Of a stretch of DNA of 45,098 bases, positions 3,673-41,448 are shown in pieces. The stretch lies in NCBI GenBank assembly GCA_038087875.1, contig JAXLNO010004965.1, positions 1 to 45,098 on the forward strand. Direction: 5' to 3'. Source of the DNA: Malacoraja senta. Lineage: Eukaryota. How positions within the stretch are numbered: the first letter of the stretch is position 1; each line of letters starts with the position of its first letter. Below the pieces are notes generated by a model. That model had not been told where the DNA came from and made no database searches. It was given only the letters and a program-made list of their open reading frames with translations. The translations under genes were made by a program, and so were the position numbers.

Positions 3673-6164
3673 CATATATGTGTAGAAAAGTACGCATACA
3701 TATATTCAAAAGGGAGATCCGGTCAGTTCAGGACCCAGTGGTCACAATCTGATGATCAGGCTTCAAGTTGAGATGAAGAGCGATTACTTCTCCCACAGAA
3801 TGATGAAGGTGTGGAATGTTATACCACTGGAAGCAGTTGAACACAGATCATTGAATTTATACAAGGAGTTATATGTTATTTGTATGGTCAAAGGATCAGA
3901 GAAATAAAAGGATCAAGGTATACATTTTAGGTCACAATTGATCACATGGAATAATAGTTGAGGCTCAAATGCCTGAATTTCTATTACTTTTATATTCTAC
4001 ATTTCAACATTTTTGTATTTATCGTGGCCACATTTCCTCTGCATCGAAGAACATGATAACTGGGATGCTTAAAAGGAACCGAGACCCTGGTGCCAATGCC
4101 TTTTTGCAGATAAGACAGATGCATACATTGGTTTGGTGTTCACAAAGCGAGGACAAATCAGAAATAATTTTCTGAACACGCCATCCATTGCTATTTCAAT
4201 GTGCTTACCCAAGATACAAAATAATAATAATATATTAATCTATATTTTAGAATGTTTGGATAAAATAAACAAAACACGGTGATCGAATGTCCCTGGGTAA
4301 GTCGTTCACACTCTGCCCTCCACCCCTTTGAGAAGTGGCTGAAGGGTGATATTAAAATACATAAAGCTTTTAAATGAATCACTATGGTGAAAACATTTCC
4401 ACCACAAAATCCAGCAGGGAATTCTACAGAGAATGCTCCCTCTCCTCCCCTCCCACCCAATACTGGTGAGAATGAGGATCCAGATCAATGAATTGCATTT
4501 AGGGGAAGGCTGGGCAAACACAAAAGAGAAAAGAACAGTCGGTTCTACATTGGAGAATCCAGCACAGACTTGCCAACCATGTTGCAGATCGCATAAGGTG
4601 GGAAGAGGCTCATGTGGACCATATGCACCAGTATTGGCAGGATAGGCAGAGTGGCCTGTTCCTACACACTTGTCTCCACTACAACCTTGTATTACTTTGA
4701 CTGCCAATTTATTTTTGATCATTTTGTTCCCATTCATTCTTTAAAAAATACAAAATCAACTTTGGCGTAAGATAACTGTGATTGATGCTGTTGCAAATAA
4801 ATGGAGGCCTTACATTTTCTTAACAACAATTTAATTTTGCGCTTTGCATATTATATCTTTCATATTATATCTTGCATATTCCATATATCTTGCCTTTACT
4901 TCGCAACATGAAGCCACTATAAAACAGGGTGCAATCCAATGTGTTTACTTGGATTTCATGCCAATCTATTTCCAAAAATCTTATACTCAATGGTCTATTC
5001 ATCAAGCACGTTCTACAGGCAACTATTGTCAGGTGAAATCTCAAGAGAAGAACTTGTACCAAATGAGCCACATAAAATGAACTTGATCACTGTGCCACCA
5101 ATCACTGTGGACAATTTTATATTCATATGGATGATAAATTCTTTGCATTAGATTAGAAATGTACAAAAAAAAACAATCAAGACTTTTTGACATCATCAAA
5201 TAACCAAGCGTTATGTAACAACATTTATTGGTGCTGTATCTCAGACAAAATGCAGTGTTAAAACAAAATATATTCTATCCAATAATGACTGTAGCTAATG
5301 GAATCTGCAACTAAAAACAGAAGACTGAAAGCATTCAATGGCTCAAGCAAATTATTGGGACAAATGGTTGATGTCACAAATAGGGTCAAGAACCTGCACC
5401 AGGCCTGCGAGGGAAGAGGATGAATTGCCAATATATAGCAATCAGGGAGGGATAGGACAGAGGCTGGTAGATCAAACGTAGAACCAGGTGGGGAGAGGAT
5501 AATGGGTAGATGGAAACAGGTAGGAGAGGAGGAGGAAGAGGTGAACAACAGGAGAATAAACTGAGACAGAGGTTCACTTGCACCTCTTTCAACTTTCTCT
5601 ACTGCATTCATTGCTCACACTGGAGAAACTAACTTAGATGTCAACCATTTTGTAGAGCACATCACTTTGAAGTAAAGATCATCCTGAGATCTGTTGTATG
5701 GTATTTTAATACCCCTTCCCACTCACACTGACCCATCTCTCGTTAACATTGGGCACAGAAAGTTTTAAGTAAAATATCTGATAATCCACCTGGGTAACTT
5801 ACAAGCCGATGGTATGAATATAAAGTTTTCACATTTCAGCTTATCCATACCACTGGTGTTCATTTGTTCTCCCACAATCACCCATACACCAACTTTGCTC
5901 CATCTGCCCATCCTCTCCTCCCCAGCTGATTCCACCTGCCACTTACCAGCCTCTGCCCCATTCCTCCTTCAAACTGTTAGTATCTTCCCATCCTCTCCTT
6001 CAATTCTAATGCAATGCCTTGACTTGAAATGTTGGTATATGTCATTTGCCTCCACAGATGCTGTTTGACCAAGTACTTCCACTGGCCTTTCTTTAGTCTA
6101 AAATTCTTGTTGGAAATAACCACAAAGTCTTACTCTATCTATAATTGAAACCATTTAATTGGTG

Positions 6165-7160
6165 CTTGGAGAGCTTTCTAAAATCATGAGGGCGATTTAT
6201 CTGGATTTATTTTACCCAGGGTAGGGTAATCAAGAACCAGCAAAAACAGGTTTAATCAGTGTTCAATGCTATTTTTTTAGGTGTCGGAGCTGTCAAACAG
6301 GGGCATTTCAGATTTTGCTGGGGGGGGGGGGCAAGCTAGTCTCCCTAGAGGGTCAAACAAGATTATAGCCTATTACTACATCCCAGTGTATAGCTAGTAC
6401 ATTAAAACATATAATACTTAATTTAATTATGACAAAATATTGCAAGGTTGCACTCACTGATTATCATGAAATATAATTATGAAGCAAGTAAAGAAAAATA
6501 CGGTTATCATGTATTTTTACAGAGGTGCCGGCAAGACACCGACTCGCCCTGACTATCCTGCAGCTCTGGGCCTTCACACACACACACACACACACACTCT
6601 CACCCTCACACCCATTCACCTACACACCCACCCACTCACCCACCCACCAGAGTTCCAGGCTCAGCTCCATGCCCACAACCACAAATGATGCACACATCAC
6701 ATGGTCTGTCTCTGCTGCATCATAGTGTTCCCCCCTCCTACAGGGAACCTCATTAGTGATGGATCTTCCCCTTACCCCTCTTTTAATCAGGTTACCCCGA
6801 CCACACACCCGCTAGTTAAAATTCCACCCTGTTTATTTTTTCTTTAACAGAGGTGCCGGATCGGTGCTCAGGTGAGCTCCGGCAGCACTGCACCCCTGGG
6901 TTTAAGGTGAGGAGGAAGATTTAGTAGGAACCTGAGAGGCAACCTTTTCTACTAAGAGGTTACTGGGTGTATGGAATGAGCTGCCTGCGAAGGCAGAATA
7001 ACAACATTGAAAAGACACTTGGACAGGTACATGGATAGAATATGTTGAGAGGAATGTGGGCCAAACGCTGGCAAATGTGACTAACCTAAATGTAGCATCA
7101 TGTCAGCTTGGAGCATTAGGCTGAAGTACCTACTTCCATGCTATATGGCTCCATGACTCT
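6165..7160 (+). mobile_element. Old CR1 3' fragment split by a DNA transposon insertion
   Basis: Joining 6165-6256 to 6907 onward restores CR1-type ...CAGGTTTAAGGTGAGGAGGAAGATTTAGTAGGAACCTGAGAGGCAACC and a CR1-type 3' UTR. Confidence 0.75.
6257..6898. mobile_element. Non-autonomous hAT-type DNA transposon (MITE)
   Basis: Ends CAGTGTTCAATGCT ... AGCACTGCACCCCTG form imperfect CAG...CTG TIRs. The 8-bp TSD is GGTTTAAT (6249-6256) / GGTTTAAG (6899-6906). Subterminal (A)GGTGCCGG repeats are present. Confidence 0.8.
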
Positions 7161-7354
7161 TTGTTAGATGAACATAAACATGGCAAATGGAGTTTAATAA
7201 TGGAAAATATGTGCTCACACACTCTGGTAAGAGCAATAAAAATAAGCTATTATCTAAATGGAGTGAGATTGCGAATGAGTGGAGTACAAGAGATTCAAGT
7301 GCTTAAACTGCAAAACAAGAAGCCAGCAGGTAGATGCAGCACACAACGCAGAAG

Positions 7355-8105
7355 GTGATTAGCATATTGGCTTGTACAAAAATTCAAAAATTTTGGATTG
7401 ACATTTTTGAAACCTTTACAAAATTATTTAAAATAAAACTGATTCCAAAAGCAGATCGGATTATCTTCGGAACAACGGAAGATAGTCCTGAACTAAATGT
7501 GTTTCAAAAGAAATCAATAGACTATGGGTTAATAACTGGAAAAAAAGTTAATCCTAAAATTCTGGAAAAATGCTCCAATACCAACTATAAACATGTGGAT
7601 TTCAAATATGTTCGAAACATCACACCTAGAAGAGATAAGACTCCTCCTGGCAGGTAAACCAGATCACTTCCACCTGACGTGGTCTGCATTCATAGAATTA
7701 TTACAAGTATAGGGTGCAAAAGTACTTTAAAAAAAAACTGAGGTCAGGTAAAGGGGGATGAAAGCTGGAGAGTTGGTATATCCCATTTGTGTGATGCGTA
7801 TAACAAAGTATTTGTTTTCTCTTTTTCCTCTTTTTCTTTTTTCTTCTTCTTTAGGGTCTATCTCTTAATCCTTTCTTTTTAATTTCTTTCTTACAGGGTC
7901 TCTGTTCTTTCTTGTTGTCACGTTTTTACGCCTTCACTATATTCCTTCACTTTCTCTTTTTTCTTAATCTCAACCTTTCCTTTTTATTAGTGTAAAAAAT
8001 GACGGAGTACATTAATTGTAATAAGATATACGTGATGAGTACGAATGTAATTGGTTGTAATGTAATGTACTTCTAATAAATAAAATAAAAAAATAAAAAA
8101 TATAA
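7355..8105 (+). mobile_element. L1 3' fragment
   Basis: FWIDIFETF...RIIFGTTE...IDYGLITGKK resembles the ORF2 end of the L1 at 19571-19978. A T-rich 3' UTR and an AATAAA/A-rich tail follow. Confidence 0.8.
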
Positions 8106-8624
8106 AAGCATATTGGCGTTCAAAGTAGGTTACTATTGTAATTATGGTACATGATGTTGCTGAGGACATATCAGGAGCACTGTGCACAGCTTGGTTCTCA
8201 AATTTAAGAAAGGATATATTAATATTGGATATCAGCTAGAAGAGATTTCTGGAATAAGCAAGTGTTGCCTAACCATGAATGGCTGAAATCACTGGTTCTG
8301 TGTCCCTTGGAGATGAGAAGAAACAGAGTTAACCTTATGAATGTATTAAAGAGGCATGATGTGGTGGTGAATTGATGGATAATGCGTGGATATATTCTAA
8401 AAGAATAGGGAATTGTGTCTTATGTGGAATAAGCACAGTAAAGTAGTTGAGGCAGTCATATCAGTTGTTATCAACATAAATTGCTAGATAGCTCTAATTT
8501 GTACAAATGCAGGGCAGTCTATTGAGAATTTCTGTCATGCTTGATAAACTTAATTTAACTCCTTCCATTTATTTCAGTTCCTGCATTTTAATCACATCCA
8601 TGAAATCTTCTACTCAGCGATTGG

Positions 8625-8665
8625 TTAGCAGTGCATGTTCTGCTTTGGTTGAATATTTTGATAAT
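8625..8665 (-). CDS. Candidate terminal cytoplasmic exon (D-YQNI-QPKQNMHC-stop)
   Basis: Branch-like TCTAAT and tract TTTAATTTCCCTCCTCAG|AT. The phase-1 frame gives (D)YQNIQPKQNMHC*. There is a minus-strand AATAAA at 8568-8573. Linkage to the TM exon across about 24.6 kb of mostly TE sequence is inferred. Confidence 0.55.
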
Positions 8666-8794
8666 CTGAGGAGGGAAATTAAATATTAGACAACAAAGAA
8701 ATGGCATAGCAGAAAACAGAACTCAGAAAGATGCAACTAGTTTATTCACTTTAACTGTTGATTCATCCCACATAACATCTTCCTTCCAGATATA

Positions 8795-8979
8795 AAGGCA
8801 CAGCGCCAGACACCTGGGTTTGATCCTGACCACGGGTGATGTCTGTATGGAATTTGTACCTTCTCCCTGTGACTGCATAGGTTTTCTCCAGATGCTCCAG
8901 TTTCCTCCCACATTCCAAAGACAGATGTGCAGGTTTGTAGGTTAATTGACCTGTGTCCCTAGCTTATGTGGGTGATCAT
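8795..8979 (+). mobile_element. tRNA-derived HE1/V-SINE-like element, 5' part (continues at 13489-13560)
   Basis: B-box-like GGGTTTGATCC and the conserved core GTTTCCTCCCACATTCCAAAGAC. The 3' part TGGTTGGTGCGGACTCAGTGGACCGAAG...CTAAACTAAAC resumes after the CR1. Confidence 0.8.
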
Positions 8980-9336
8980 AAGGTCCGAAAGCCGTTGGAG
9001 AGGTCGCTGAGGGAGGAGCTACAACCGAGCGGTAGGACTTAAAAAGGAGCGCGGGGGCTTGTTCCTTACAGAGGTCCGAAAGCCGTTGGAGAGGTCGCTG
9101 AGGGAGGAGCTACAACCGTAGGACTTAAAAAGGAGTACCCAAATCGGCAACGTTCCACTTCAAAAACAAGTGGGTTTGAGGAAGCCGCTGATTGGTGGAC
9201 GCAGATAAGAGAGAGCAGCTGATTGGGAGTCAGATCCCTGCTGATTGTACTGTATTGTAGCAGTTTGTTTTGTATTGTAGCAGTTTGTTTTGTATTCTAT
9301 CAGTTTGTTTTATATTCTATCCAGGGTAAGGGGAGT

Positions 9337-10272
9337 ATGACGGCCAGGGCAGTTTACTGTTCTGGATGTCAGATGTGGGAAGTAATGGAGTCTGTTAGCC
9401 CTCCAGACGTCCACATCTGCGCCAGGTGTATCGAGATGGGGCTCCTAATGGACCGTATTAGGAACCTGGAGCAGCAGCTCGATGACCTCCGTCTGGTCAG
9501 GGAGAGCGAGGAAGTCATTGAGAGGAGTTACAGGGATGTGGTCACTCCAACACCACAGGAGGCAGGCAAGTGGATCACGGTTGGGAGAGGCAAGGGGCAC
9601 AGGCAGGGACTAGAGAGTACCCCGGTGGCTGTACACCTTGACAATAAGTACTCCTGTTTGAGCACTGTTGGGGTGGACAGCCTACCTGGGGGTAGCGACA
9701 GCGGCCGGGCCTCCGGTATAGAGACTGGTCCTGTTGCTCAGAAGGGTAAGGAAAAGAAGAGGAGGGCAATATTAATAGGGGACTCTATAGTTAGGGGGTC
9801 AGACAGGCGATTCTGTGGACGCAGTCGGGAGACCCGGATGGTAGTTTGCCTCCCTGGTGCCAGGGTCTGTGATGTGTCCCAACGTGTCCAAGACATCCTG
9901 AAAGGGCAGGGAGAGGAGCCCGAGGTCGTGATACATATAGGTACCAATAACATAGGTAAAAAAAGAGAAGAGGTCCTGAAAGGAGAATTTAGGGAGTTAG
10001 GAGGGGAGTTAAAGAGAAGGACAGCAAAGGTAACAATCTCGGGATTACTGCCTGTACCACGCGACAGTGAGAGTAGGAATGGAGCGAGGTGGAGGATAAA
10101 TGCGTGGCTGAAGGACTGGTGCAGAAGGCAGGGATTCAAATTTCTGGATCATTGGGACTTCTTTTGTGGAAGGTTCGACCTGTACAAAAAGGATGGGTTG
10201 CACTTGAACCTGAGGGGGACCGATATCCTGGCGGGGAGATCTGCAAAGGCTACTGGGGAGACTTTAAACTAG
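9337..10272 (+). CDS. CR1 ORF1p: N-terminal Cys motif/coiled coil plus SGNH (GDSL) esterase domain
   Basis: MTARAVYCSGC...CARC, then a heptad region, then the esterase blocks LIGDSIVRG, CLPGA, HIGTNN and DGLHL. The first ATG is at 9337. Confidence 0.92.
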   Translation: MTARAVYCSGCQMWEVMESVSPPDVHICARCIEMGLLMDRIRNLEQQLDDLRLVRESEEVIERSYRDVVTPTPQEAGKWITVGRGKGHRQGLESTPVAVHLDNKYSCLSTVGVDSLPGGSDSGRASGIETGPVAQKGKEKKRRAILIGDSIVRGSDRRFCGRSRETRMVVCLPGARVCDVSQRVQDILKGQGEEPEVVIHIGTNNIGKKREEVLKGEFRELGGELKRRTAKVTISGLLPVPRDSESRNGARWRINAWLKDWCRRQGFKFLDHWDFFCGRFDLYKKDGLHLNLRGTDILAGRSAKATGETLN

Positions 10273-13200
10273 AATGGTTGGGGGGAGGGACTCAAATAGA
10301 GAATGCTATTAGACAGTGTGTGAGGCAGGAGGCAGAGAAGGAAAGCACTCAGACCCAACATGTAGGGGGGAAAGAAGAAAACAATAATAAACAGAGAATA
10401 AGAGGTGGTGGGGTTCTTAAATGGGTGAGCAGAGAAACAGAGGGGTGTAAAATGCGGGCGGAAGCAATAGGTAGCAAGGTGAAAGGTAAAAGTGGCAGGC
10501 AGACAAATCCAGGACAAAAATCAAAAAGAGCCACTTTTCAACATAATTGTATAAGGGGTAAGAGCGTTGTAAAAACAAGTCTGAAGGCTTTGTGTCTCAA
10601 TGCAAGGAGCATTCGTAATAAGGTGGATGAGTTGAACGTGCAGATAGCAATTAATGATTATGATATAGTTGGGATCACGGAGACATGGCTCCAAGGTGAC
10701 CAAGGCTGGGAGCTGAACATCCAGGGATATTCAATATTCAGGAGGGATAGAGAGAAAGGAAAAGGAGGTGGGGTGGCGTTGCTGGTTAGAGAGGAGATTA
10801 ACGCAGTGGAAAGGAAGGACATTAGCTTGGAGGATGTGGAATCGGTATGGGTAGAGCTGCGAAACACTAAGGGGCAGAAAACGCTGGTGGGCGTTGTGTA
10901 CAGGCCACCTAGCAGTAGTAGTGAAGTTGGGGATGGCATCAAACAGGAAATTAGAAATGCGTGCAACAAAGGCAAAACAGTTATAATGGGTGACTTCAAT
11001 CTACATATAGATTGGGTGAATCAAATTGGCAGGGGTGCTGAGGAAGAGGATTTCTTGGAATGTATGAGGGATAGTTATCTAAACCAACATGTAGAGGAAC
11101 CAACGAGAGAGCAGGCTATTCTAGACTGGGTATTGAGTAATGAGGAAGGGTTAGTTAGCAGACTTGTTGTGCGTGCCCCCTTGGGCAAGAGTGATCATAA
11201 TATGGTTGAGTTCTTCATTAGGATGGAGAGTGACATTGTTAATTCAGAAACAACGGTTCTGAACTTAAAGAAAGGTAACTTTGAGGGTATGAGACATGAA
11301 TTGGCCAAGATTGACTGGCAATTAGTTCTAAAAGGGTTGACGGTGGATATGCAATGGAAGGCATTTAAAGACTGCATGGATGAACTACAAAAATTGTTCA
11401 TCCCAGTTTGGCAAAAGAATAAATCAAGGAAGGTAGTGCATCCGTGGATAACAAGGGAAATCAGGGATAGTATCAAAGCAAAAGATGATGCGTACAAATT
11501 AGCCAGAAAAAGCAGCATACCAGAGGACTGGGAGAAATTCAGAGACCAGCAGAGGAGGACAAAGGGCTTAATTAGGAAAGGGAAAATAGATTATGAAAGG
11601 AAACTGGCAGGGAACATAAAAACTGACTGCAAAAGTTTTTATAGATATGTGAAGAGAAAGAGATTAGTTAAATCAAATGTAGGTCCCTTGCAGTCAGAAA
11701 CAGGTGAATTGATCATGGGGAACAAGGATATGGCAGACCAATTGAATAACTACTTTGGTTCCGTCTTCACTAAGGAAGACATAAATAATCTGCCGGAAAT
11801 AGCAGGGGGCCGCGGGTCAAAGGAGATGGAGGAACTGAGTGAAATCCAGGTTAGTCGGGAAGTGGTGTTGGGTAAATTGAATGGATTAAAGGCCGATAAA
11901 TCACCAGGGCCAGATAGGCTGCATCCCAGAGTACTTAAGGAAGTAGCTCCAGAAATAGTGGATGCATTAGTGATAATTTTTCAAAACTCTTTAGATTCTG
12001 GAGTAGTTCCTGAGGATTGGAGGGTAGCAAACGTAACCCCACTTTTTAAGAAGGGAGGGAGAGAGAAAACGGGGAATTACAGACCAGTTAGTCTAACATC
12101 GGTAGTGGGGAAACTGCTAGAGTCAGTTATTAAAGATGGGATAGCAGCACATTTGGAAAGTGGTGAAATCATTGGACAAAGTCAGCATGGATTTACGAAA
12201 GGTAAATCGTGTCTGACGAATCTTATAGAATTTTTCGAGGATGTAACTAGTAGAGTGGATAGGGGAGAACCAGTGGATGTGTTGTATCTGGACTTTCAGA
12301 AGGCTTTCGACAAGGTACCACATAAGAGATTAGGATACAAACTTAAATCACACGGTATTGGGGGTTCAGTATTGATGTGGATAGAGAACTGGCTGGCAAA
12401 CAGGAAGCAAAGAGTAGGAGTAAACGGGTCCTTTTCACAATGGCAGGCAGTGACTAGTGGGGTACCACAAGGCTCAGTGCTGGGACCCCAGCTATTTACA
12501 ATTTATATTAATGATCTGGACGAGGGAATTGAAAGCAACATCTCCAAGTTTGCGGATGACACTAAGCTGGGGGGCAGTGTTAGCTGTGAGGAGGATGCTA
12601 GGAGACTGCAAGGTGACTTGGATAGGCTGGGTGAGTGGGCAAATGTTTGGCAGATGCAGTATAATGTGGATAAATGTGAGGTTATCCACTTTGGTAGCAA
12701 AAACGGGAAGGCAGACTATTATCTAAATGGTGGCCGATTAGGAAATGGGGAGATGCAGCGAGACCTGGGTGTCATGGTACACCAGTCATTGAAAGTAGGC
12801 ATGCAGGTGCAGCAGGCAGTGAAGAAAGCGAATGGTATGTTGGCCTTCATAGCAAGAGGATTTGAGTATAGGAGCAGTGAGGTTCTACTGCAGTTGTACA
12901 GGGTCTTGGTGAGACCACACCTGGAGTATTGCGTACAGTTTTGGTCTCCAAATCTGAGGAAGGACATTATAGCCATAGAGGGAGTGCAGAGAAGGTTCAC
13001 CAGACTGATTCCTGGGATGTCAGGACTTTCATATGAAGAAAGACTGGATAGACTTGGCTTATACTCGCTAGAATTTAGGAGATTGAGAGGGGATCTTATA
13101 GAAACGTACAAGATTCTTATGGGGTTGGACAGGCTAGATGCAGGAAGATTATTCCCGATGTTGGGGAAGTCCAGGACAAGGGGTCACAGCTTAAGGATAA

Positions 13201-13388
13201 GGGGAAAATCCTTTAAGACCGAGATGAGGAAAAACGTTTTCACACAGAGAGTGGTGAATCTCTGGAACTCTCTGCCACAGAGGGTAGTTGAGGCCAGTTC
13301 ATTGGCTATATTTAAGAGGGAATTAGATGTGGCCCTTGTGGCTAAAGGGATCAGGGGGTATGGAGAGAAGGCAGGTACGGGATACTGA
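10089..13388 (+). CDS. CR1 ORF2p: APE endonuclease + reverse transcriptase
   Basis: Open for 1099 codons. EN motifs CLNARS, GITETW, GDFN and SDH; RT motifs [18 protein letters not shown] and KFADD. The first ATG is at 10452. Confidence 0.95.
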   Translation: MEDKCVAEGLVQKAGIQISGSLGLLLWKVRPVQKGWVALEPEGDRYPGGEICKGYWGDFKLEWLGGGTQIENAIRQCVRQEAEKESTQTQHVGGKEENNNKQRIRGGGVLKWVSRETEGCKMRAEAIGSKVKGKSGRQTNPGQKSKRATFQHNCIRGKSVVKTSLKALCLNARSIRNKVDELNVQIAINDYDIVGITETWLQGDQGWELNIQGYSIFRRDREKGKGGGVALLVREEINAVERKDISLEDVESVWVELRNTKGQKTLVGVVYRPPSSSSEVGDGIKQEIRNACNKGKTVIMGDFNLHIDWVNQIGRGAEEEDFLECMRDSYLNQHVEEPTREQAILDWVLSNEEGLVSRLVVRAPLGKSDHNMVEFFIRMESDIVNSETTVLNLKKGNFEGMRHELAKIDWQLVLKGLTVDMQWKAFKDCMDELQKLFIPVWQKNKSRKVVHPWITREIRDSIKAKDDAYKLARKSSIPEDWEKFRDQQRRTKGLIRKGKIDYERKLAGNIKTDCKSFYRYVKRKRLVKSNVGPLQSETGELIMGNKDMADQLNNYFGSVFTKEDINNLPEIAGGRGSKEMEELSEIQVSREVVLGKLNGLKADKSPGPDRLHPRVLKEVAPEIVDALVIIFQNSLDSGVVPEDWRVANVTPLFKKGGREKTGNYRPVSLTSVVGKLLESVIKDGIAAHLESGEIIGQSQHGFTKGKSCLTNLIEFFEDVTSRVDRGEPVDVLYLDFQKAFDKVPHKRLGYKLKSHGIGGSVLMWIENWLANRKQRVGVNGSFSQWQAVTSGVPQGSVLGPQLFTIYINDLDEGIESNISKFADDTKLGGSVSCEEDARRLQGDLDRLGEWANVWQMQYNVDKCEVIHFGSKNGKADYYLNGGRLGNGEMQRDLGVMVHQSLKVGMQVQQAVKKANGMLAFIARGFEYRSSEVLLQLYRVLVRPHLEYCVQFWSPNLRKDIIAIEGVQRRFTRLIPGMSGLSYEERLDRLGLYSLEFRRLRGDLIETYKILMGLDRLDAGRLFPMLGKSRTRGHSLRIRGKSFKTEMRKNVFTQRVVNLWNSLPQRVVEASSLAIFKRELDVALVAKGIRGYGEKAGTGY

Positions 13389-14428
13389 GTTGGATGATCA
13401 GCCATGATCGTATTGAATGGCGGTGCAGGCTCGAAGGGCCGAATGGCCTACTCCTGCACCTAATTTCTATGTATCTATGTATCTATGTATCATTGGTTGG
13501 TGCGGACTCAGTGGACCGAAGTGTCTGTTTCAATGCTCTCTCTCTAAACTAAACAAAAACTCAATACTCCTTCAAATAGTTTCGTTCACACATTTTCTAT
13601 GTTTTCTAACTTTCGCCTCCACACTAGGGTCAAATTACAGAGACCAATTAACCCATAAAACCTGGCATCTTTAGTATGTGTGTGAAAACTGGAGGACAGT
13701 GGAAACCCATGCGGTCATAGGGAATACATGCAAACTTCACACAGCCGACAACCGAGGTTAGGATTGAACTGATGTGTATGACGCACTGAGGCAGCAACTC
13801 TATCAGCAGCGCCACTCTGCCTCAGGTTGCGTCATGTTCAGCACAAACGTTGTTGGACAAAGGACCTGTTCTTCTATTACAGGGGCATTCCCATTCACCG
13901 TAAAATTCAGCGAACTCAGCACCATTGGGTCACTGGAAATATTCCCTGCCTGACCATCAGATCCCTCCAGATCAGTCGGACAGACACCAGTTAGGCAGAA
14001 TCTGCCTGCAAATGATTCATGTCCCTCAAACCCCTGCATCTCCATGCACCCACGAAGGTGCACCCCAGACGCCACCATCCCTGGCAGTGCTTTCCAGGCA
14101 CACACCACATAGTATGTAATAAAAACTTGCCCTTTTTAAAAAACTGCAGCTTCTACCCTGCACTGAATATAATGCAATAATTTAAATGCCATAGTAGGCA
14201 TTTAGTTAATTGGGATAATTTTAGTCAATTGGGAGGTGTGATTGCAAATCTTGTACAATATCATAAACCAAGTAAAATGTGACAGAGTGGCGCTATGGAG
14301 GCTTGAGTCCAGCGCCAACTAGCTCCGTGCCGAAGAAACTAAAAACGGGAGAAAATCGGGTCTTACCTGCAGCGATCACGATTTGAACGGCTGCCTGCGT
14401 GACGTCATCAGGCGCGCTACTTTACGGT

Positions 14429-15460
14429 ATGTCGTTACAACGTACCCCCACCCGTGTGACACAAAAAAAAGCCGTTAAAGGGAAACTGCAGACGGAAGAG
14501 GAAGGCCCTACAGAGGCCTCGGCCTCAGTTACAACGACGGCCCAGGAAGACCCTCGGAAGAAAATAAAACAGAAAAAGTCTGAAATGGAGGATCTTAAAA
14601 CTTTTCTCGTTGCCGAATTGAAAACCTTTGGAGAGAATTTTAAAGAGGAACTTTACTCTTTTAAGGTAGATTTTAAAGCAGAAATGCTTTCTACCGTTCA
14701 ACAAATACTGGAAATCTGGAAAAGGACGAGGGAGGAAGAAGTCAAGGATCAGATGGAAGCGCTGGAAGCCAGGCTCGTTTCGGTGGAAGCGAACGTTAAT
14801 ATGGATGTGGCCCCCATTCATCACGAACTTGATCAACATAGAACAGCGATAACCGAACTTGAGAAATGGGCGGCGACAAGTGCGGAAACTGTAAGTCGAC
14901 TCCTTACTGAAAACCAACGCCTCTCCGATATGGTGATCAAATTAAGTGATAAATGTACCGATTTGGAGGGACGTCAAAGACGTAAGAACCTAAGAATTGT
15001 AGGGGTGAAAGAAGGAAGTGAGAGGGAAATGGGCTCTCGGGACTTTGTGGCAGACCTATTACAAAAAGCCTTCAAATTGGATCACAAACCTTCACTCGGT
15101 CGAGCTCATAGAGCGCAGCGGCGTCGTACACAAGATGATGCCCATCCAAGACAAATTATCGTAAAGGTGCAACTGGATCATGAATTTGACGATATAATGA
15201 AGAAAATTGTTCGAGGCGGACAGCTCCTTTTTGAAGGTGTGAGATTCAGTATTTACCGAGATTATCCGGCAGAAGTCTTCAAGAAAAGAGCGCTGTTCAC
15301 TGAGACAAAAAGAATACTGAAGAATGTACCTGGTTTGAGATACGGCCTGCTTTATCCCGCAAGACTAAGAGTCACCTACAAGTCCAAGGAGCAATTTTTT
15401 ACAGACCACGAAAAAGCACTGGAATATGCCAAAGAAATCGGTAACATGACCGTAGACTGA
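14429..15460 (+). CDS. L1 ORF1p (coiled coil + RRM + CTD), open frame
   Basis: DLEGRQRRKNLRIVGVKEG, RAHR, IYRDYP and YGLLYPARLRVT are L1 ORF1 motifs. ATG at 14429. Confidence 0.9.
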   Translation: MSLQRTPTRVTQKKAVKGKLQTEEEGPTEASASVTTTAQEDPRKKIKQKKSEMEDLKTFLVAELKTFGENFKEELYSFKVDFKAEMLSTVQQILEIWKRTREEEVKDQMEALEARLVSVEANVNMDVAPIHHELDQHRTAITELEKWAATSAETVSRLLTENQRLSDMVIKLSDKCTDLEGRQRRKNLRIVGVKEGSEREMGSRDFVADLLQKAFKLDHKPSLGRAHRAQRRRTQDDAHPRQIIVKVQLDHEFDDIMKKIVRGGQLLFEGVRFSIYRDYPAEVFKKRALFTETKRILKNVPGLRYGLLYPARLRVTYKSKEQFFTDHEKALEYAKEIGNMTVD

Positions 15461-16468
15461 AGAATTTACATTACTCCTTAGGAGTCAAGGACTAACAGGA
15501 CCGCCAGATCTAAAAGGACCTTTAAAGGTCTTTTAAGAGCTTTAAGGACATTCGAAAACCGAAAAAGACAGAGGACATTGGAGAAAACCGTGATCTTTGT
15601 AATTTTTTTTTAAAACTTTTTTTTTTTTACTAATCATTATTATTATCTGTATATTCATATCTAACTATATATGTAACAACTAATACTTATTAAATATCCA
15701 TATTACCACTAAAATTATTAACATTAACATTTCTCATAAAAATTTAATACTGTATATGATTGATAACAATGATTAATAATTAATAGTCTTCGATTAACGT
15801 AGAAATGAATTACATACTTATATTATATAGGAGGATATGCAAGAGGTAAATTAGCCTACGTCATAATAAAGCTTGACGGTTTTTCTCTTTATTTTTCAAT
15901 TTCAAATTAAATTTATAGATTTAGCGAAGAAATTAATATGATATGTAGAGAATAATAACGTTGTGAATTTTTGCTGTTCTTGAACTTTTCTACAGGGATA
16001 CGTGCTTATGTATGTATGCACATGGGTATATATACATATATATATATGTATGTATATTGTGTGTGTGTATGTATGGGTATGTATATAAGTTTGTTATCCC
16101 AAAGAAGTTATTTGAATGTTAGAAATAATCTTTCTTTTTCTTCGGGCACGGAGCTGGGAATTTTTTTTTTCTTACAAAGGCTACGGAAGTCTTTAGAATT
16201 CTAGCCACGTTAGTGTGGCTATCACTAACTACACTAATTGTAGATGTAGTTCTTTTTCTTTCACCCTTTACTAATCAATTCTATCACTTTTTTCACTTTA
16301 AATATTTTTATAACTTAATGTTTGAATGGAAAAACAAGACTAATACAAGGAGATGTGTTCGGAAGAGCGATGTAGATGATTTTAAATTCATCTATCTGAA
16401 GTTCGGGAGCAGGGTCAGGTTTTATGTGTTGTACCTTCTGCTCGGTTATAGACCACTTTAGAAACAAT

Positions 16469-19400
16469 ATGCAAGATGTTAATATGACAAGAGGGGGTCA
16501 GGGAATAACATTTTGTAGTTGGAATGTCAAGGGAATCAATGAACCAATTAAGAGAGGTAAAGTTTTGGCACATCTAAATTTAATCAAAACAGATATAATA
16601 TTTCTCCAAGAAACACACCTTAAAAAGGAATCTCAACATAGACTTAAAGCTAAGTGGATCGCTGAATCATATCATTCCTCTTTTTCCCATAAGTCCAGAG
16701 GAGTTGCAATATTAATTCGTAAAGGAATACCTTTTACGAACTCTTCAACAATAGTGGATATTGATGGTAGATATATTATATTAGTTGGAGAGTTAAATGG
16801 AGAAAAAGTGATTCTTCTTAATGTATGTGGGCCTAACTTTGATAACCCCATGTTTTTTAATAAAACATTTAATAAAATTCCTGAATTTACACAATATAAA
16901 TTAATAATTGGAGGAGACTTCAATTGTACATTAGATTCATACTTAGATAGATCATCAAGGCAAAAAAAAGTAAAATCTCAATCAAGTGTATTTCTAAATT
17001 CATTTATTAATACCACTAATATTAAGGATGTCTGGAGAATAGAAAACCCAACTGGACGGGAATATTCATTTTACTCACCAGTATATAAAACATACTCAAG
17101 AATAGATTATTTTTTAGTTGACTCTACGTTTATCCCATTTATTTATAATTCAAAATACCATAACATTATAATCTCAGATCACGCACCTGTAACATTCATG
17201 ATAAAATTAAATGGAATGTCTGAGAAACAAGCATATTGGAGATTTAACCCACAAATTTTGAACGAAAGATCATGCCAGGAATATATTATTAAACAGATTC
17301 AAATATTTTTTGAGGTAAATGACAACCCTGACACACCTACTTCTCTTATGTGGGAAACGTTTAAAGCGTTTGTTCGAGGTACATTAATTTCTGCTCAAGC
17401 ATTTTATAATAAAGAGAACAGGATTAAGCAACAAACATTGGAAAGTGAAATCAAGCAACTAGATATAGAAAATGCGAGAATGCCATCTATTTTAAAACAT
17501 TATAAAATTGCTGTATTGAAATATAAATTAAATAAAATGTATTCAGAACAAGTAATAAAACTTTATCAAAAAACCAAACAATTACATTTTGAATTTGGAG
17601 ACAAACCACAAAAACTATTAGCACGTTAGTTACGAAAAATGGAAGGGGAAAAAATAATTCATAAAATTAGAACAGAGACAGGAGAATTATTAAAAATGCC
17701 CAAGGACATAAATGATAGATTTCTCCAATACTATCATAACCTTTATTCAACAAAAACCGTAGGACAATCAGAAGGAATAGCAGATTTTTTACTAAAATGT
17801 AATTTAAAAGGTTTAGATTCAAACGATAGAGAATTATTAGAAAAGGAGATTACGATAAAAGATATTGAGGAGTCTATTGGCTCTTTAAAAAATGTTAAAG
17901 CAGTAGGACCAGATGGTTTAGGCTCCGAATTTTATAAAAAAAATTATGATTTGCTTTGCCCACGTTTACAAAGACTGTATGAGTATATCTATACTCAACA
18001 GAAACTTCCAGACACTTTAAATGAATCTATAATAACACTTATTCCTAAAGCTGATAAAGATCCGGAAGACCCGGGATCATATAGAGCAATTGCACTTTTA
18101 AATACAGATCAGAAAATATTAACTAAAATACTAGCGCATAGATTAAGTACAGTGATGAATAAATTAATACACCCTGACCAAACAGGCTTTATTCAGAAAC
18201 GGTACTCATATTATAATCTAAGAAGATTATTTAATATTATATATTCCAAGAGAATTATTAATGAAGATCTAGCAATAATCTCACTTGACGCTGAAAAAGC
18301 ATTTGATCAGGTCGAATGGTCTTATTTATTTTCGGTGATGGAAAATATGCAGCTAGGGGAGAAATTCTGTACATGGATAAAACTGTTATATACAAATCCC
18401 ATGGCTAGAATATTTACAAACCAAAGGTTGTCATCTAAATTTAGCCTATCTAGAGGTTGTAGACAAGGATGCCCGTTATCTCCATTATTATTTGCGCTTG
18501 CTATTGAGCCACTTGCAGAAAGAGTCAGGGGGCATCCGGAAATACACGGGTGTAACACAAAGGACACAGTGAATAAAATTTCTCTATACGCAGATGATGT
18601 ATTAATTTACATTACAAAACCAGAAATTAGTATTCCAAACTTATTAAAGCTAATAACCCAATTTGGTTCACTTTCAGGATACAGAATAAATTGGAATAAA
18701 AGTGAAATTATGCCAATAAGGGAACGTAACAAACAGATAATACAACAATTTCCATTTAAAATAGTAAAGGTAAAATTTAAATATCTAGGTATTTATGTAA
18801 CTAAGATATATACATCATTATTTAAAGCAAATTTTCCACCATTACTGAATAAACTACATAAGAATATTCAATACTGGAAAACACTTCCTATCTCAATGGT
18901 TGGCAAGATTAATGCCATAAAAATGATTTTTTTACCGCAAATATTATACTTTTTTCAGACAATTCCGATATATCTGGCAAAAGACTTTTTTAAAAAACTG
19001 GACTCTATTGTTAATGATTTTATCTGGGATTATAAGAATCATAGGATAAACAAAAGACATTTGTGTAAATCAAAAATAAATGGAGGCTTGGTTTTACCCA
19101 ACTTTTTGTTTTATTTCTGGGCAGTTAATATTAAAAATATGAATTTCTGCTTGGAAGAAATAGATCATCAACCAGACTGGTTAAAAATGGAAAAGGAAGA
19201 TTGTTTACCTTTTGATATCGGTTCGATATTATTTGCTACGTCTAAATTAAACAAAAAAACTTATAGGGAAAACCCTATAATATTTAGTGCTATACGAATT
19301 TGGAAAAAATTAAAACAGATTAAAATTAGATAATTTATCACTTTTTCTTCCAATTGTGAATAACCCTTTGTTTAAGCCTTCATGGTTGGACGGGGGTTTT

Positions 19401-19978
19401 ACACAATGGAAGAATTATGGAATTAAAAATATGGGACAACTTTACAAGGAAGGCACTTTTCTGACATTTCAGGAGTTGCAACAGACTTATGGACTTCGAG
19501 GAAATGATTATTTCAGATATCTTCAACTTAGAGATAAAATCTTTCAACATATCTCACCTATATGTGATAAATGTCAACATTTAGAAGCTACCTTATCTCA
19601 TATGTTTGCAAACTGTATAAAATTAAAAAATTCTGGGTAAATATTTTCAGTATAATATCTAAAATAACCAGCACACAATTGGACCCAGATCCAAAATTAA
19701 TAATACTTGGAATATTAGAATTAAATCAAACATTTAGAACAACACAAAGAAACTTTATTGATTATAGTTTAATAACAGGAAAAGAATTAATTCTAAAATT
19801 TTGGAAAGGCCCTACGATCCCCACAATCAAAATGTGGATTATAGAAATGACGGAGACCTTAAACGAGGAAAGAATCAGATTCTCCCTGTTGGACAAACAG
19901 GAATTATTCGTTGGAACATGGTCTCCTTTTATTGATTACTTAAAGGGTCAGAACAGTTCAGCACAGGAACCTGACTAG
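16469..19978 (+). pseudogene. L1 ORF2 (EN-RT-Cys domain), disrupted
   Basis: SWNVKG, LQETH, GGDFN, SRIDY and SDHAP; DAEKAFD, QGCPLSP and YADD; CDKC...HMFANC. Stops at 17627-17629 and 19331-19333, an apparent deletion near 19530, and a frameshift. Confidence 0.92.
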
Positions 19979-20088
19979 CACTCGGGCTAAAGAATGGATG
20001 AAATGCTATACTTAGAAATGTACGAATATATCTCGAATGAAGTTTTTTATTTTAATAAATTTTTCCATTCTTCTTTAATTATCTCTTT

Positions 20089-20125
<37 letters not shown>

Positions 20126-20458
20126 CTTCTTTTCTTTCTTTACTTCATCTATCTCTTTAGTTCTATTTAGTTTATAAAAAAAAAGGCAAAAGGTATTGGA
20201 GACAATGTAATAATAATTGACAATATTATCAATTTAAAAATGTAAGACTGTAATGATGTAAATAGGTTGTGTACTTATCTCCAATAAAAAATATTTTCAA
20301 AAAAAAAAAAATGTGACAGTCAAAATGGCCAGGCACAAAGAACAGAATAATCATGAACATCAATAACATGTCAATAACTAGACTCTCCTAGCAGCAGCAT
20401 GCTGTAAGGTTGCAAACTCGTTTGCTCCCTTAACTTTTAACTTCCACTGACCACTCTT

Positions 20459-21030
20459 TCAATCAATCAATCAATCAATCAGTCAACCTTTATTGTCATC
20501 TTGCAAGCAACAGTTGTACAGTGCAAAATGAAAAGACGTTTCCCAGGGAATACCGGAGCATCGCACATGAAATTTAAAACATTTCTCACATAATAACACT
20601 AAAAACAATCCAGTCCCTGATGGAACAGTATAAATAGTTAAAAAGTAGGTAAAACAACAACGTTAAAATACAGTAAAACCAATCATAAACATGTCCGGGG
20701 CAGCTGATTTGAGTGGCCAGTGCCAGTTATTGAAGTGGTCAGTGCCAGTTATTAAAGTGTCCGTGCCAAGCCACAGAATCAGGTGACTGTGAGTACAGAG
20801 TGGCTGTTTAGCAGCCTCACAGCATATGGCAGGAAGCTGTTTAGCAGTCTTGTAGTCCGGGCTTTGATGCTGCGATATCTCTTGCCTGATGGCAGGAGAT
20901 CCAGGTGTATGTGGAGGGGTGCAGTTTGTCCTTAGCAATTCTCTGAGCTTTTTTCAGACAGCGGCTCTGGAACAGTTCTCGTACCGAGGGTAGGGAGACG
21001 CCAATGATCCTCTCTGCTCCCCTCACTACC
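20459..21030 (-). mobile_element. Rex1/Babar-like LINE 3' fragment with (GATT)n tail
   Basis: Near-identical reverse complement of 24270-24812. It encodes [21 protein letters not shown]. Confidence 0.88.
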
Positions 21031-23446
21031 CTTTCAATGTTACTGGTGACTATTTGTCTTCAAGACACCGTCTAACTGTTCATAAAGTGTTGGTAACACT
21101 TTTACACGCCTTAATCATGAAAAGGATGGAGACAAGAAGGAAAGGAGGATCCCCAAAGAAGGAACTGGGGAAAGCCACAACCACAGCTGCAGCTTCTGAT
21201 TCCAGCATTATAGAAGCAATATCGAAAATGAACGATGAATTGAAAAATGAGCTGAAAAATGAAATGAAAACAAGATTTGGCAGTTTGGAAGAAATGGTGA
21301 AAGGAGTTTCGACCAAATTGAAGGAGGTCCAAGGAAAACTGTCTTTGTTACAAGATGAACTTCGTGAACAAAAGGATCAAATTGATATCTTGCGCACCCT
21401 GGGACAGGAGAGAGATTTGAAGATTGAAAAATTGGAACGGAGAATGAATGAAAACACTTCAGCAATACAAGTCTAAAAATATGGACTGAGAAAACAGAAG
21501 GCGTGGTTTGAATTGACGAATTGTTGGTTTGCCGGAAAGCCAAGAAGAAGATAACGGTATAAAATATGCTTCTAAAATGATAAAGGAAACATTCAACATT
21601 GAGCACAATGAAAACCTTCCGTTCATGGATAAGGCACACAGGATTGGGAAGAGATCCGGTAATAAACCGAGACACTTGATCATTCGGTTTCATTTTTTTC
21701 AAATGAAGGAGAATATTCTCCTGGCAGCAAAAAAGTTTGGTGTGGTTGAATATGAAGGATGTAAGTTTCGGTTTGTCCCTGATTATAGTTACGAGCTTTT
21801 GGAAATAAGAAATACTTTTTATAATGTAATGTCTGATTTGTATAAGAAAAACTGCGCCGAGCTTTATTATCACCAGCTAGATTGCGTATTCGGCTTTTCA
21901 ATGGTGACTTTCGATTTTTTAACAGTCCTCAAGACGCCTCCAGCTTTCTGAAGAGCTACGACGGGGGAGTAATTGATAGCTGATTAAGTTATAATTGGAG
22001 ATTTACTGTTCCTATTTTGACAACATTTCGTTTGGTAATGATTAAGAATTTAACTGGACGAGTTGTTTTTCTTTTATATATATTATTTTTAGAATTTCTT
22101 TGTTAATTCGTGTTCCCCTGTCGTTAGACAAACTAAGAGAACGCAGTTCTTGTTTTTCATATCTTGACCTTGGATAATAATAAGCAGCATTCCATGCCAG
22201 TCTGTATTTTTTTCTTCTTCTCTCTCAAAGGGATAATTACGAATGTGTTATGACGTAGTGGTTAAATATTATTCTTTTTATGCTGAGCGCTGTTACTGGG
22301 AGAAATGGGATTCGGGAGGGGATTAGGTAGTTTGCTAACTGTCTTTTGGTCAGTTTGGGGTTCTACAGGGGTGGGAGGGGGGGAGAAGGAGGGGTCTTTT
22401 GTTCCCTATTTAGTGATCTCCATTTGTGCAAATTCTGAACTACAAAATTGGCTGAAATGTCGTCACTTCTGCCTCCGCCCTAGATTTTTCTTCTTCCAGT
22501 ATTATGAACTTTTAGGCTTCAAGAAATTAACCCATTACATCCCACATGATTTTTACAAGCAATATGGATAAAGTTACTAATTTCCTTTCATGGAATGTGA
22601 ATGGCTTGAACCATCCCATTAAGAGGATTTAAAAAAAAAAAGTTCTTCACAGACTAAATGCTCAGATTATCTTTGTTCAGGAAATTCACGTAAGGCAAGA
22701 TGACAAGTCACGATTTTTCAAGTTTTGGAGAGGACAGCAGTTTCATTCAAATTCACAGGCTAAGGTGAAAGGAGTCTCTATTTTTATTGACTCTTCAATT
22801 CCGTTTGTTACACTATGAAACAATTTCTGATCCATATGGCAGATTTTTGGTGATTACCGGTGTCCTTTATAGGCAAAAAGTCGCTATGGTGAATGTCTAT
22901 GCACCAAATATTGATCACCCTGAGTTTTTTAAACAGTTAATTGCATCATTTCCTAATTTAAATGAACACTTTTTTAATAATGGGTGGAGACTTCAATTGC
23001 TGTTTGAATCCCTCGATTGATAGGTCTACATTAGATCATGCGCTTCCAAAAAAATCAGCTAATTTATTAATTATTTTTTACTTGACTCGGAATGTTAGAA
23101 ATTTGGAGATTCTTACACGCAAATGACAAAGAATTTTCATTTTTCTCTCATGTATATCATAGCTATTCTAGGATCGACTATTTTATACTAGATTCTCGTC
23201 TAGTTCCATCGGTCATTGCATGTGAGTATGATACAATTGCTATTTCTGATCATGCACCAGTGAAACTATTGATCAAACTACCTGATTCCAAGTTTAGTGC
23301 TAAACAATGGCGATTTAATGCTACTTTGCTTCAAGACTTAAACTTTATTAAGTTTATGAAAGATCAGATTACTTTTTACTTCTTGACAAACTGTAATGAA
23401 GAGATATCCAATGGTATCGTTTGGGATGCTTTTAAGGCATATATTC

Positions 23447-24812: not shown

Positions 24813-25529
24813 CGTGGACAAATTATTTCATACTCCGCGGGATTAAAAAAACAAACACAAAAAGGAATACGCACGTTGGCTGACGAGATTAAAGAAATTT
24901 ATTAAAAATATTCAAAAGCTCCTAGTTTAGAGCTCTATAAGAATAGAGTTGACCTTCAATTGAGATATGATTTGTTATTAGTATCACCGATTGAGAACCA
25001 GTTACTTAAAACCAAAAGTAAATTTTATATAAATGGCGAAAAAAATCTGGTAAATTACTTGCTAATCAATTGACAGCAGCGTCGGCCAAGCGTCAGATTA
25101 CTAAAGTGAGTAATCCGGATGGTACAGTAACTATAGACCATGACGAAATTAATAAATCCTTTCAGGAATTTTATACCTCCCTATACCAATCAGATGTTCC
25201 TACTGATTCCAATATAATGCATGAGTTTTTAAAGAAATTGAACTTACCAAATTTACCATACAATGAGTCTCTGTTGTTAGATGAACCCATCACGGATGAA
25301 GAAATACAGAAAGCAATTTGTTCAATGAATTCTGGTAAAGCTCCCGGTTTAGATGGGTTTACAGTAGAATTTTTTAAGTATTTCTCAAATGTATTGTCTC
25401 CATGGCTATGCAAGGTATTTATAGAAGCCTTTTTAAGGAATAGATTACCACAATCTTTTTATGAAGCTTCTATTTCTTTAATTTAAAAAAAAGATAAAGA
25501 CCCTACTAAAGTGACATCATATAGACCTA

Positions 25530-32660: not shown

Positions 32661-32734
32661 AAACTAGTAAACGTTAAACTGCAACCAATCTGCCTCATAG
32701 CTGACTTGGATTGTGAGCAGTGGAAGCCCCCAAC

Positions 32735-38673: not shown

Positions 38674-38699
38674 CTCTACAATAGATAGAGCAAAGAGGA

Positions 38700-41385: not shown

Positions 41386-41448
41386 GCTTGATTGCACATG
41401 TGTAGTATGATCTGATTGGATGACACACAGACACACTTTTGACTATAT

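What the first reader, a model, noticed from the sequence alone, without database searches (positions are those of the whole stretch)
8568..8700. Candidate last exon gives a CD1-like YQNI endocytosis tail
Seen: a very good acceptor (branch TCTAAT, tract TTTAATTTCCCTCCTCAG) in non-repetitive DNA, a short frame ending in TAA, and AATAAA about 50 nt later. Splicing it to the TM exon gives ...IVWWRKKRR-D-YQNI-QPKQNMHC*. Knowledge: human CD1b ends RRRSYQNIP, a YxxPhi adaptor-binding motif just after the basic cluster. Inference: an endosome-trafficking, possibly lipid-presenting, class I-like molecule in a cartilaginous fish, by descent or convergence. Caveat: the intron would be 24.6 kb (mostly three LINEs), and short YxxPhi motifs arise by chance (see the rejected 30646-30725 candidate).
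Basis: partly seen in the sequence, partly recalled or inferred. Interest (0 to 1): 0.8.

Follow-up and report, generated by a model that had tools for sequence, protein, structure and literature searches.

The report
Skate UGA gene's tyrosine-tail exon, dead copy
The short exon is real: it is the last coding exon of UGA, a shark-and-ray MHC class I-like gene already on record as CD1-like, and it carries a conserved tyrosine sorting signal, but the copy in this window is a broken one among at least 100 copies in this skate genome.

Summary
On the minus strand an acceptor (AG at 8667-8666) opens a 41-base coding stretch (8665-8625) that joins in frame to the TM exon (33393-33286), giving ...WWRKKRR-D-YQNI-QPKQNMHC*.

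The exon is genuine for the gene lineage:
- Two public transcript contigs from a related skate carry an uninterrupted 334-residue reading frame with exactly this TM|tail junction.
- A third contig, from another relative, ends at 8667 and runs on into TM-exon sequence.
- NCBI gene models of Rhinoraja, Amblyraja and Leucoraja end the same way. The Rhinoraja intron is only 4.4 kb.
- Tyr-x-x-Ile/Val sits at the same place in 12 of 13 shark, ray and skate orthologues.

The lineage is UGA. PDB 9CH4, "shark nonclassical MHC class I, UGA", is by far the best match. A 2025 review calls UGA CD1-like and lipid-binding.

- This copy is a pseudogene fragment. Its alpha3 exon has a private 1-base deletion and a private GT>AT donor, and alpha1 and alpha2 are not on the contig.
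- The AATAAA is not the mRNA end in relatives; the 3' UTR runs on for more than 2 kb.
- The DNA is not single-copy: the genome holds about 100-111 copies.

The scan had already found this on other copies in this genome.

The parts
8625..8665 (-). Coding part of the last exon: AT + 12 codons + TAA. It encodes (D)YQNIQPKQNMHC*. The family consensus has Val for Met (G for A at 8636).
   Evidence: It is orthologous to the annotated last coding exon of Rhinoraja, differing at 3 of 41 bases.
8666..8690 (-). Acceptor: TCTAAT branch-like site, pyrimidine tract and AG.
   Evidence: Identical over 25 bases in Rhinoraja L049. The AG is unchanged in all 100 copies matched. The X1 contig leaves the window at 8667 and continues as TM-exon sequence.
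5116..8624 (-). 3' untranslated part of the same terminal exon. It is collinear with related-skate cDNA at 8624-8107, 7369-6899 and 6255-5116, and is interrupted here by stretches missing from the cDNA (7370-8106 and 6256-6898).
   Evidence: L050, L051; the C246 copy is contiguous across the 8107/7369 point; X1 contig reaches 8163.
8568..8573 (-). It is not the end of the mRNAs seen in relatives.
8666..33285 (-). Intron of 24,620 bases between the TM and tail exons, swollen by LINE insertions. Endonuclease/reverse-transcriptase reading frames lie at 9223-13388, 16424-19333 and 23092-24603.
   Evidence: Pfam RVT_1, Exo_endo_phos. The same intron is 4.4 kb in Rhinoraja.
33286..33393 (-). Connecting-peptide/transmembrane exon, 108 bases, intact, with a GTAAG donor, ending in phase 1.
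39604..39869 (-). Alpha3 (Ig C1-set) exon, 266 instead of 267 bases. There is a 1-base deletion in the A run at 39663-39662, which shifts the frame before YSCHVDH. The donor at 39603-39602 reads AT instead of GT.
   Evidence: 9 paralogues are intact at both sites; each lesion is unique in the genome; C1-set.
35154..38678 (-). Young LINE inserted in the alpha3-TM intron of this copy only, relative to the C246 copy.

Best explanation
Window 8665-8625 (minus strand) is the coding start of the terminal exon of a skate copy of UGA. UGA is a nonclassical MHC class I lineage of sharks and rays, with six exons: leader, alpha1, alpha2, alpha3, TM and tail/3' UTR.

In working copies the TM exon is spliced to this exon. 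The protein then ends in a short tail: a basic cluster, one residue (mostly Asp), Tyr-Gln-Asn-Ile, then eight more residues ending in Cys.

The likely mechanism is inferred from what is established for YxxPhi signals in CD1b/c/d and LAMP-1. The Tyr-x-x-Ile signal, 7 residues from the membrane, would bind the mu subunits of the adaptor complexes AP-2 and possibly AP-3. The molecule would then be taken up from the cell surface into late endosomes or lysosomes, where hydrophobic ligands can be loaded.

The copy in this window is a dead fragment of that gene. Its alpha3 exon carries a frameshift and a destroyed splice donor. Alpha1 and alpha2 lie off the contig. Young LINEs have enlarged the introns. 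It is one of about 100-111 copies produced by recent duplication of a unit of more than 50 kb. Some of those copies are open from alpha1 to the stop codon.

Shown: exon identity, the splice junction in relatives, conservation of the motif, UGA membership, the lesions and the copy number.
Inferred: adaptor binding, endosomal routing and lipid presentation.
For: Splicing:
- Logan contigs L050 (SRR11241640) and L051 (SRR13269358) each hold an uninterrupted 334-residue frame ending ...WWRKNRRDYQNIQPNQNVPC*.
- They align to the window exon by exon: 39871-39603, 33394-33286, then from 8667 downwards.
- A contig of run X1 lies on 8163-8667. It then runs on for 77 letters whose reverse complement is the end of the TM exon (...TTTGGTGGAAGAAAAAGAGGAG).

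Orthology:
- In Rhinoraja longicauda XP_078272153.1 the last coding exon sits behind the identical acceptor, 4.4 kb after the TM exon.
- Amblyraja XP_032898133.1 and Leucoraja XP_055521885.1 end in DYQNI....

Conservation:
- Tyr and Ile/Val at +3 are present in 12 of 13 orthologue tails from skates, sawfish, stingray, manta and five shark orders.
- Among 31 paralogues, 8680-8521 has 6 of 64 variable sites in 160 of 684 columns (binomial P 0.003; P 0.03 after allowing for any window).

Lineage:
- PDB 9CH4 scores 404 bits against the Rhinoraja protein, against 183 for the next hit.
- Its title is 'shark nonclassical MHC class I, UGA'. It is the best structural match of the modelled skate ectodomain (Z 26.5, 59% identity).
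- The review PMC12562908 reports UFA and UGA as CD1-like lipid binders.

Pseudogene:
- See for the two alpha3 lesions.
- The contig ends at 45098 with no alpha1 or alpha2.

Copy number.
Against: - No RNA of this species itself was examined. The spliced contigs come from relatives 6-18% divergent over this exon.
- No run is on record as RNA. X1 is only guessed to be RNA, although a spliced junction is hard to explain otherwise.
- The 1-base deletion lies in a short A run and could be an assembly error.
- Heptranchias (...RRRRDAA) and two Pristiophorus models lack the motif, either truly or through poor gene models.
- Adaptor binding and trafficking are untested.
- In Atlantic cod, class I molecules reach endolysosomes independently of cytosolic sorting signals, according to a paper title cited in PMC12562908. 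A motif is therefore not proof of routing.
Confidence: 0.87

Rival explanations
1. The window copy is a working gene. On this view the two alpha3 lesions are assembly errors, or alpha3 is skipped to give an alpha1-alpha2-TM-tail product.
For: The TM exon, its donor, the acceptor and the tail frame are intact in this copy. The deletion is in a short homopolymer. This is a short unplaced contig in a highly repeated family, where consensus errors are more likely.
Against: Two independent disabling changes lie within 60 bases, and both are unique among more than 100 copies. A G>A substitution at the donor is not a typical assembly error. Copies differ by 1-3%, so an untouched 108-base exon is expected in a young pseudogene. 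The cDNAs of relatives include alpha3. Other copies are demonstrably dead: 15 of 50 share a 2-base deletion in alpha2, and two of the nine paralogues have an AG>AA acceptor.
Confidence: 0.08
2. The conserved tyrosine is not an adaptor-binding sorting signal. It would serve another purpose instead, such as a phosphotyrosine docking site or another trafficking step.
For: Only the motif and its conservation are shown, with no functional data. A paper title cited in PMC12562908 reports cod class I reaching endolysosomes without cytosolic signals.
Against: The pattern is exactly YxxPhi with a bulky aliphatic residue at +3. It lies 6-7 residues after the membrane, behind a basic cluster. In sharks it is the very C-terminus, the arrangement of the CD1 tails listed in PMC5002277 and of lysosomal membrane proteins (my knowledge). 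No second tyrosine or ITIM/ITAM spacing is present.
Confidence: 0.1
3. The exon is a chance open frame behind a chance acceptor.
For: YxxPhi occurs by chance in roughly one short tail in ten (my estimate). The intron is 24.6 kb.
Against: The junction is seen in three transcript contigs of relatives, in annotated orthologues, and with an identical acceptor in another genus.
Confidence: 0.01

Closest known systems
UGA, nonclassical MHC class I lineage of sharks and rays (PDB 9CH4; review PMC12562908)
   Same: Alpha1-alpha3 sequence: orthologues score 404-568 bits against 9CH4. The exon plan and the short tail with YxxI/V are also shared. The window's alpha3, TM and tail exons are 92-94% (alpha3, TM) and 82-89% (terminal exon) identical to full-length UGA-type cDNAs of a related skate.
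   Different: The review describes UGA as single- or low-copy, whereas this genome has about 100-111 copies and Rhinoraja has at least 10 annotated paralogues. This particular copy is a pseudogene fragment. Batoid tails carry 8 extra residues ending in Cys after the motif, whereas shark tails end at the motif.
Mammalian CD1b, CD1c and CD1d (lipid-presenting, YxxPhi tails such as RRRSYQNIP in human CD1b and RRRVYQNIQ in pig CD1d)
   Same: A short tail on a separate last exon, with a basic cluster then Y-Q-x-I a few residues from the membrane. Lipid binding is reported for UGA (personal communication in PMC12562908).
   Different: There is no specific sequence relationship. Pfam places the orthologues in MHC_I (74-87 bits), while PF16497 stays below its cut-off (not listed at E 0.001 for Amblyraja; 19.5 and 29.8 bits for the other two, against 35). 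After 9CH4 the best solved relatives are MR1 and classical class I. The exact YQNI is a skate-specific state.
Chicken YF1*7.1 (lipid-presenting nonclassical class I)
   Same: It is the next-best structural match of the modelled skate ectodomain (Z 23.2-23.8, 31-32% identity).
   Different: The Z values are within about 1 of many classical class I molecules, so this shows only the shared fold.
LAMP-1-type C-terminal GYQTI lysosomal signal (from my knowledge, not checked here)
   Same: Rhinoraja tails read DYQTI and shark tails end in YxxV/I at the C-terminus, at a similar distance from the membrane.
   Different: The proteins are unrelated. This is a functional analogy only.

Membership tests
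UGA lineage (shark/ray nonclassical MHC class I) | Alpha1-alpha3 sequence clearly closer to the solved UGA than to any other class I | tested here: met
   Rhinoraja orthologue against 9CH4: 404 bits, next hit 183. Stegostoma: 568 bits. The entry title names UGA. The alpha1 of this genome's copies is 86% identical to Leucoraja and about 92% to Rhinoraja (counted by eye).
UGA lineage (shark/ray nonclassical MHC class I) | Complete, open gene in this window | tested here: not met
   The alpha3 exon is frameshifted and its donor reads AT. There is no alpha1 or alpha2 on the contig. The window holds a pseudogene member, not a working one.
UGA lineage (shark/ray nonclassical MHC class I) | Single or low copy, MHC-linked (as described in PMC12562908) | tested here: not met
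   100-111 copies by exon probes. MHC linkage was not tested, because most copies lie on unplaced contigs.
MHC class I superfamily | MHC_I alpha1/alpha2 domain plus a C1-set alpha3 domain, then a TM segment | tested here: met
   Pfam PF00129 and PF07654 on orthologues and on exon translations of a paralogue. The model has the class I fold.
CD1 family | Sequence membership (Pfam PF16497 above its cut-off, or CD1 as nearest relatives) | tested here: not met
   PF16497 reaches 19.5 and 29.8 bits in two orthologues and is not listed at E 0.001 in the third (cut-off 35). No CD1 appears among solved sequences at E<=1e-40. Chicken CD1-1 ranks 24th by structure.
CD1 family | YxxPhi tail on a short last exon | tested here: met
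   CD1 tails are listed in PMC5002277.
CD1 family | Hydrophobic groove that binds lipids | not testable with these tools
   Only a personal communication in PMC12562908.
YxxPhi adaptor-binding sorting signals | Tyr, two residues, then a bulky hydrophobic residue, in the cytosolic tail a few residues from the membrane | tested here: met
   The sequence reads WW-RKKRR-D-YQNI. The pattern is conserved in 12 of 13 orthologues.
YxxPhi adaptor-binding sorting signals | Binding to AP-2/AP-3 mu subunits and Tyr-dependent internalisation | not tested
   Needs bench work.

The most novel reading that the evidence does not exclude
Skates have turned UGA into a very large gene family. Elsewhere UGA is described as a single- or low-copy CD1-like gene. 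This genome has about 100-111 copies on units of more than 50 kb, often as inverted pairs. A good fraction are still open from alpha1 to the stop, and nearly all keep the lysosome-type YQNI tail. If many are expressed, this would be a polygenic lipid-presenting system in a cartilaginous fish, comparable in scale to the cod class I expansion.
Probability: 0.4. Interest if true: 0.6.

Novelty: new member of a known kind. Interest (0 to 1): 0.3.

Why it matters
A tyrosine sorting tail kept from sharks to skates supports the idea that routing of a class I-like molecule into endosomes is as old as jawed vertebrates. That is the cell-biological half of CD1-type lipid presentation, and the idea is already in circulation for UGA and UFA.

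For this window the practical result is an annotation:
- a pseudogene fragment;
- a correct last exon;
- a 24.6-kb intron that is long only because of LINE insertions.

The size of the family in this skate is the one point that goes beyond what I found on record.

Tried and rejected
- A protein search with the alpha3 exon alone found nothing, because hits must be of similar length to the query.
- Neither search for sequencing runs returned a run on record as RNA. The splice evidence therefore comes from Logan contigs that are spliced, not from labelled RNA-seq of this species.
- Run X2 gives short contigs at very high depth that cross the acceptor into the intron. I read it as DNA, or possibly unspliced RNA. 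I draw no expression or copy-number figure from it.
- I found no primary paper on UGA or UFA and no citation of 9CH4. I also found nothing on a skate expansion.
- I considered alpha3 skipping for this copy and rejected it (see rivals).
- The diversity dip over 8680-8521 among paralogues is only modest evidence (P about 0.03 after scanning). The copies are also related by descent, so I do not lean on it.
- I could not decide descent from CD1 against convergence. Sequence gives no specific link.

Full report
WHAT IS AT THE COORDINATES

The gene lies on the minus strand. Reading 8730 to 8540 downwards gives TCTAAT, a pyrimidine tract, CAG, then ATTATCAAAATATTCAACCAAAGCAGAACATGCACTGCTAA, with AATAAA at 8573-8568.

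The TM exon is 33393-33286. It has a good acceptor and a GTAAG donor and ends in phase 1. Its last G plus AT reads Asp, and the frame continues as YQNIQPKQNMHC and a stop. The intron is 24,620 bases. It holds at least three LINEs with endonuclease and reverse-transcriptase reading frames.

IS IT AN EXON?

Yes, for the gene lineage.

- A search with the alpha1 exon of a paralogue found full-length class I proteins of skates, rays and sharks.
- The 90%-identity cluster around the Leucoraja protein contains three 334-residue proteins called on Logan contigs of only 1.4-3.5 kb. Contigs that short must be spliced transcripts.
- Two of these contigs were fetched: L050 from SRR11241640 and L051 from SRR13269358. 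Each holds the whole reading frame without interruption.
- Both align to the window as separate blocks: alpha3 at 39871-39603, TM at 33394-33286, then directly from 8667 downwards.
- Independently, a 585-base contig of run X1 (a different organism, about 6% divergent) lies on 8163-8667. It then runs on for 77 letters whose reverse complement is the end of the TM exon.
- In the annotated Rhinoraja longicauda gene (L049), the last coding exon follows the identical 25-base acceptor. It differs from the window at 3 of 41 bases and lies 4.4 kb after the TM exon.

The long intron here is therefore the result of transposon insertions and is no argument against the exon.

TWO CORRECTIONS

1. The exon does not end near the AATAAA. 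The cDNAs stay collinear with the window at 8624-8107, 7369-6899 and 6255-5116. The X1 contig passes the hexamer without stopping. The terminal exon therefore carries a 3' UTR of more than 2 kb. In this copy a 740-base insert interrupts it, and that insert is missing from the C246 paralogue.
2. The DNA is not unique. The alpha3 exon and the tail stretch each have more than 115 first-look candidates at 96-99% identity.

THE MOTIF

Tails of orthologues:

| Species | Tail |
|---|---|
| Rhinoraja | KDYQTIQPNQNMRC |
| Amblyraja | RDYQNIPPNQNVPC |
| Leucoraja | RDYQNIQPNQNVPC |
| Pristis | KAYENIRANQNLRC |
| Hemitrygon | GDYESIRAHRRVNC |
| Mobula | SDYENIPAHRNVNC |
| Heterodontus | RAYNAV |
| Stegostoma | RGYNVI |
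| Scyliorhinus | RDYNTV |
| Cetorhinus | KDYNVV |
| Mustelus | REYNAV |

Tyr and an aliphatic residue at +3 are present in 12 of the 13 tails aligned. Heptranchias is the exception. The family consensus in this genome is RKKRRDYQNIQPKQNVHC, and the Met in the window is private.

Among 100 copies matched over the acceptor plus the first 29 coding bases, 86 are identical. The few coding changes are two synonymous, Ile>Val twice, Ile>Phe once and Asp>Gly once.

The exact YQNI is a skate state of a general YxxI/V signal, so the identity with CD1b is a coincidence within a shared motif class.

WHICH GENE

By sequence, PDB 9CH4 matches Stegostoma at 568 bits and Rhinoraja at 404 bits. The next hits are MR1 and classical class I at about 180 bits.

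A model of the Rhinoraja ectodomain (mean pLDDT 82.7) has 9CH4 as its best structural match: Z 26.5, rmsd 3.0, 267 residues, 59% identity. That entry is titled 'Crystal structure of shark nonclassical MHC class I, UGA', released 2026-03-18. The next matches are chicken YF1*7.1, zinc-alpha2-glycoprotein and classical chicken class I. All are within a few Z units and share only the fold.

The review PMC12562908 says UFA and UGA are CD1-like, single- or low-copy and MHC-linked, and that they bind lipids like CD1d, citing a personal communication. PMC10751288 mentions UFA as unpublished.

Pfam files the orthologues under MHC_I. PF16497 stays below its threshold. The family works like CD1, as far as is reported, but is not a CD1 family member by sequence.

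THIS COPY

Aligned with nine paralogues, the window's alpha3 exon lacks one A of an AAA run (39663-39662). This shifts the frame just before YSCHVDH. Its donor also reads AT instead of GT at 39603-39602. Each lesion occurs nowhere else in the genome.

The contig is 45,098 bases long and ends before alpha2. In other copies alpha2 lies about 9 kb upstream of alpha3. A 3.5-kb LINE, 99% identical to another copy in the window, sits in the alpha3-TM intron of this copy only.

This is a young pseudogene fragment. Its intact TM and tail exons are what 1-3% divergence would leave by chance.

THE FAMILY (SEEN IN PASSING)

| Exon probe | Matches |
|---|---|
| Tail | 100 |
| TM end plus donor | 111 |
| Alpha1 | 70 |
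| Alpha2 site | 50 (15 share a 2-base deletion) |

Eight loci were examined exon by exon:
- Four (C2386, C2656, C4261, C1653) are open from alpha1 to the stop with canonical splice sites.
- One has Cys>Trp at the alpha3 disulphide.
- The other three did not fit my extraction patterns at one exon.

The C246 copy, used to find the exons, carries the 2-base alpha2 deletion. Rhinoraja has at least ten distinct annotated paralogues on one chromosome. This does not fit 'single or low copy'.

VERDICT

The lineage and its CD1-likeness are already on record. Earlier follow-ups in this scan reached the same reading on other copies (s1-140134, s1-140082, s1-140170, s1-140130, s1-140167). I re-derived it here from my own calls. 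The name UGA is now tied to the title of a PDB entry.

Noticed in passing
own genome, e.g. G000:C2386:322190-361709, C2656:52812-103692, C4261:11307-50906, C1653:12828-52194: The UGA-type gene is present in about 100-111 copies on units of more than 50 kb. Four of eight loci checked are open from alpha1 to the stop. 15 of 50 copies share one 2-base deletion in alpha2, so duplication went on after that copy had died. The literature I found calls UGA single- or low-copy.
   Followed up: partly
G000:C3993 (TM at 14903- and 32018+), C2060, C1226; C4189:61118/71409/81701: Copies often sit as inverted pairs, head to head or tail to tail. On C4189 the TM exon recurs three times at 10.29-kb spacing, as a partial tandem unit.
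   Followed up: no
window 7370-8106: A 740-base insert lies in the 3' UTR of this copy. It is absent from the C246 paralogue and from the cDNAs of relatives. Its reading frame at 7334-7657 resembles the 3' end of the L1-like element at 19571-19978.
   Followed up: partly
window 10089-13388 (+), 35245-38543 (-), 40562-41515 (-): Three copies of one LINE family (esterase-type ORF1 plus endonuclease/reverse-transcriptase ORF2) match the same C246 LINE copy at about 99% identity. The element has probably been active recently.
   Followed up: partly
window 8660: A low-depth contig of another organism (run X3) has G>A on the plus strand here. On the gene strand this turns CAA into TAA directly after the Tyr codon. 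It could be a dead copy in that species or an error.
   Followed up: no
window 8682: Contigs of runs X2 and X5 match up to 8682, 17 bases before the exon, and then continue with two different unrelated sequences. Some copies seem to have other DNA upstream of the pyrimidine tract.
   Followed up: no
window 39603-39540 (-): Reading on past the alpha3 donor gives a short open tail (...KYSFIDNHYLLLFPF*). NCBI annotates this as the end of a 311-residue Leucoraja protein (XP_055486429.1) that lacks the TM segment. It may be an intron-retaining soluble form in working copies.
   Followed up: no
window 43000-43410: A G+C-rich stretch has long open frames on both strands, rich in Arg, Pro, Gly and Ser. 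It was not examined.
   Followed up: no
window 44724-44999 (-): An open frame looks like the GIY-YIG endonuclease end of a Penelope-like element. This is judged by eye only.
   Followed up: no
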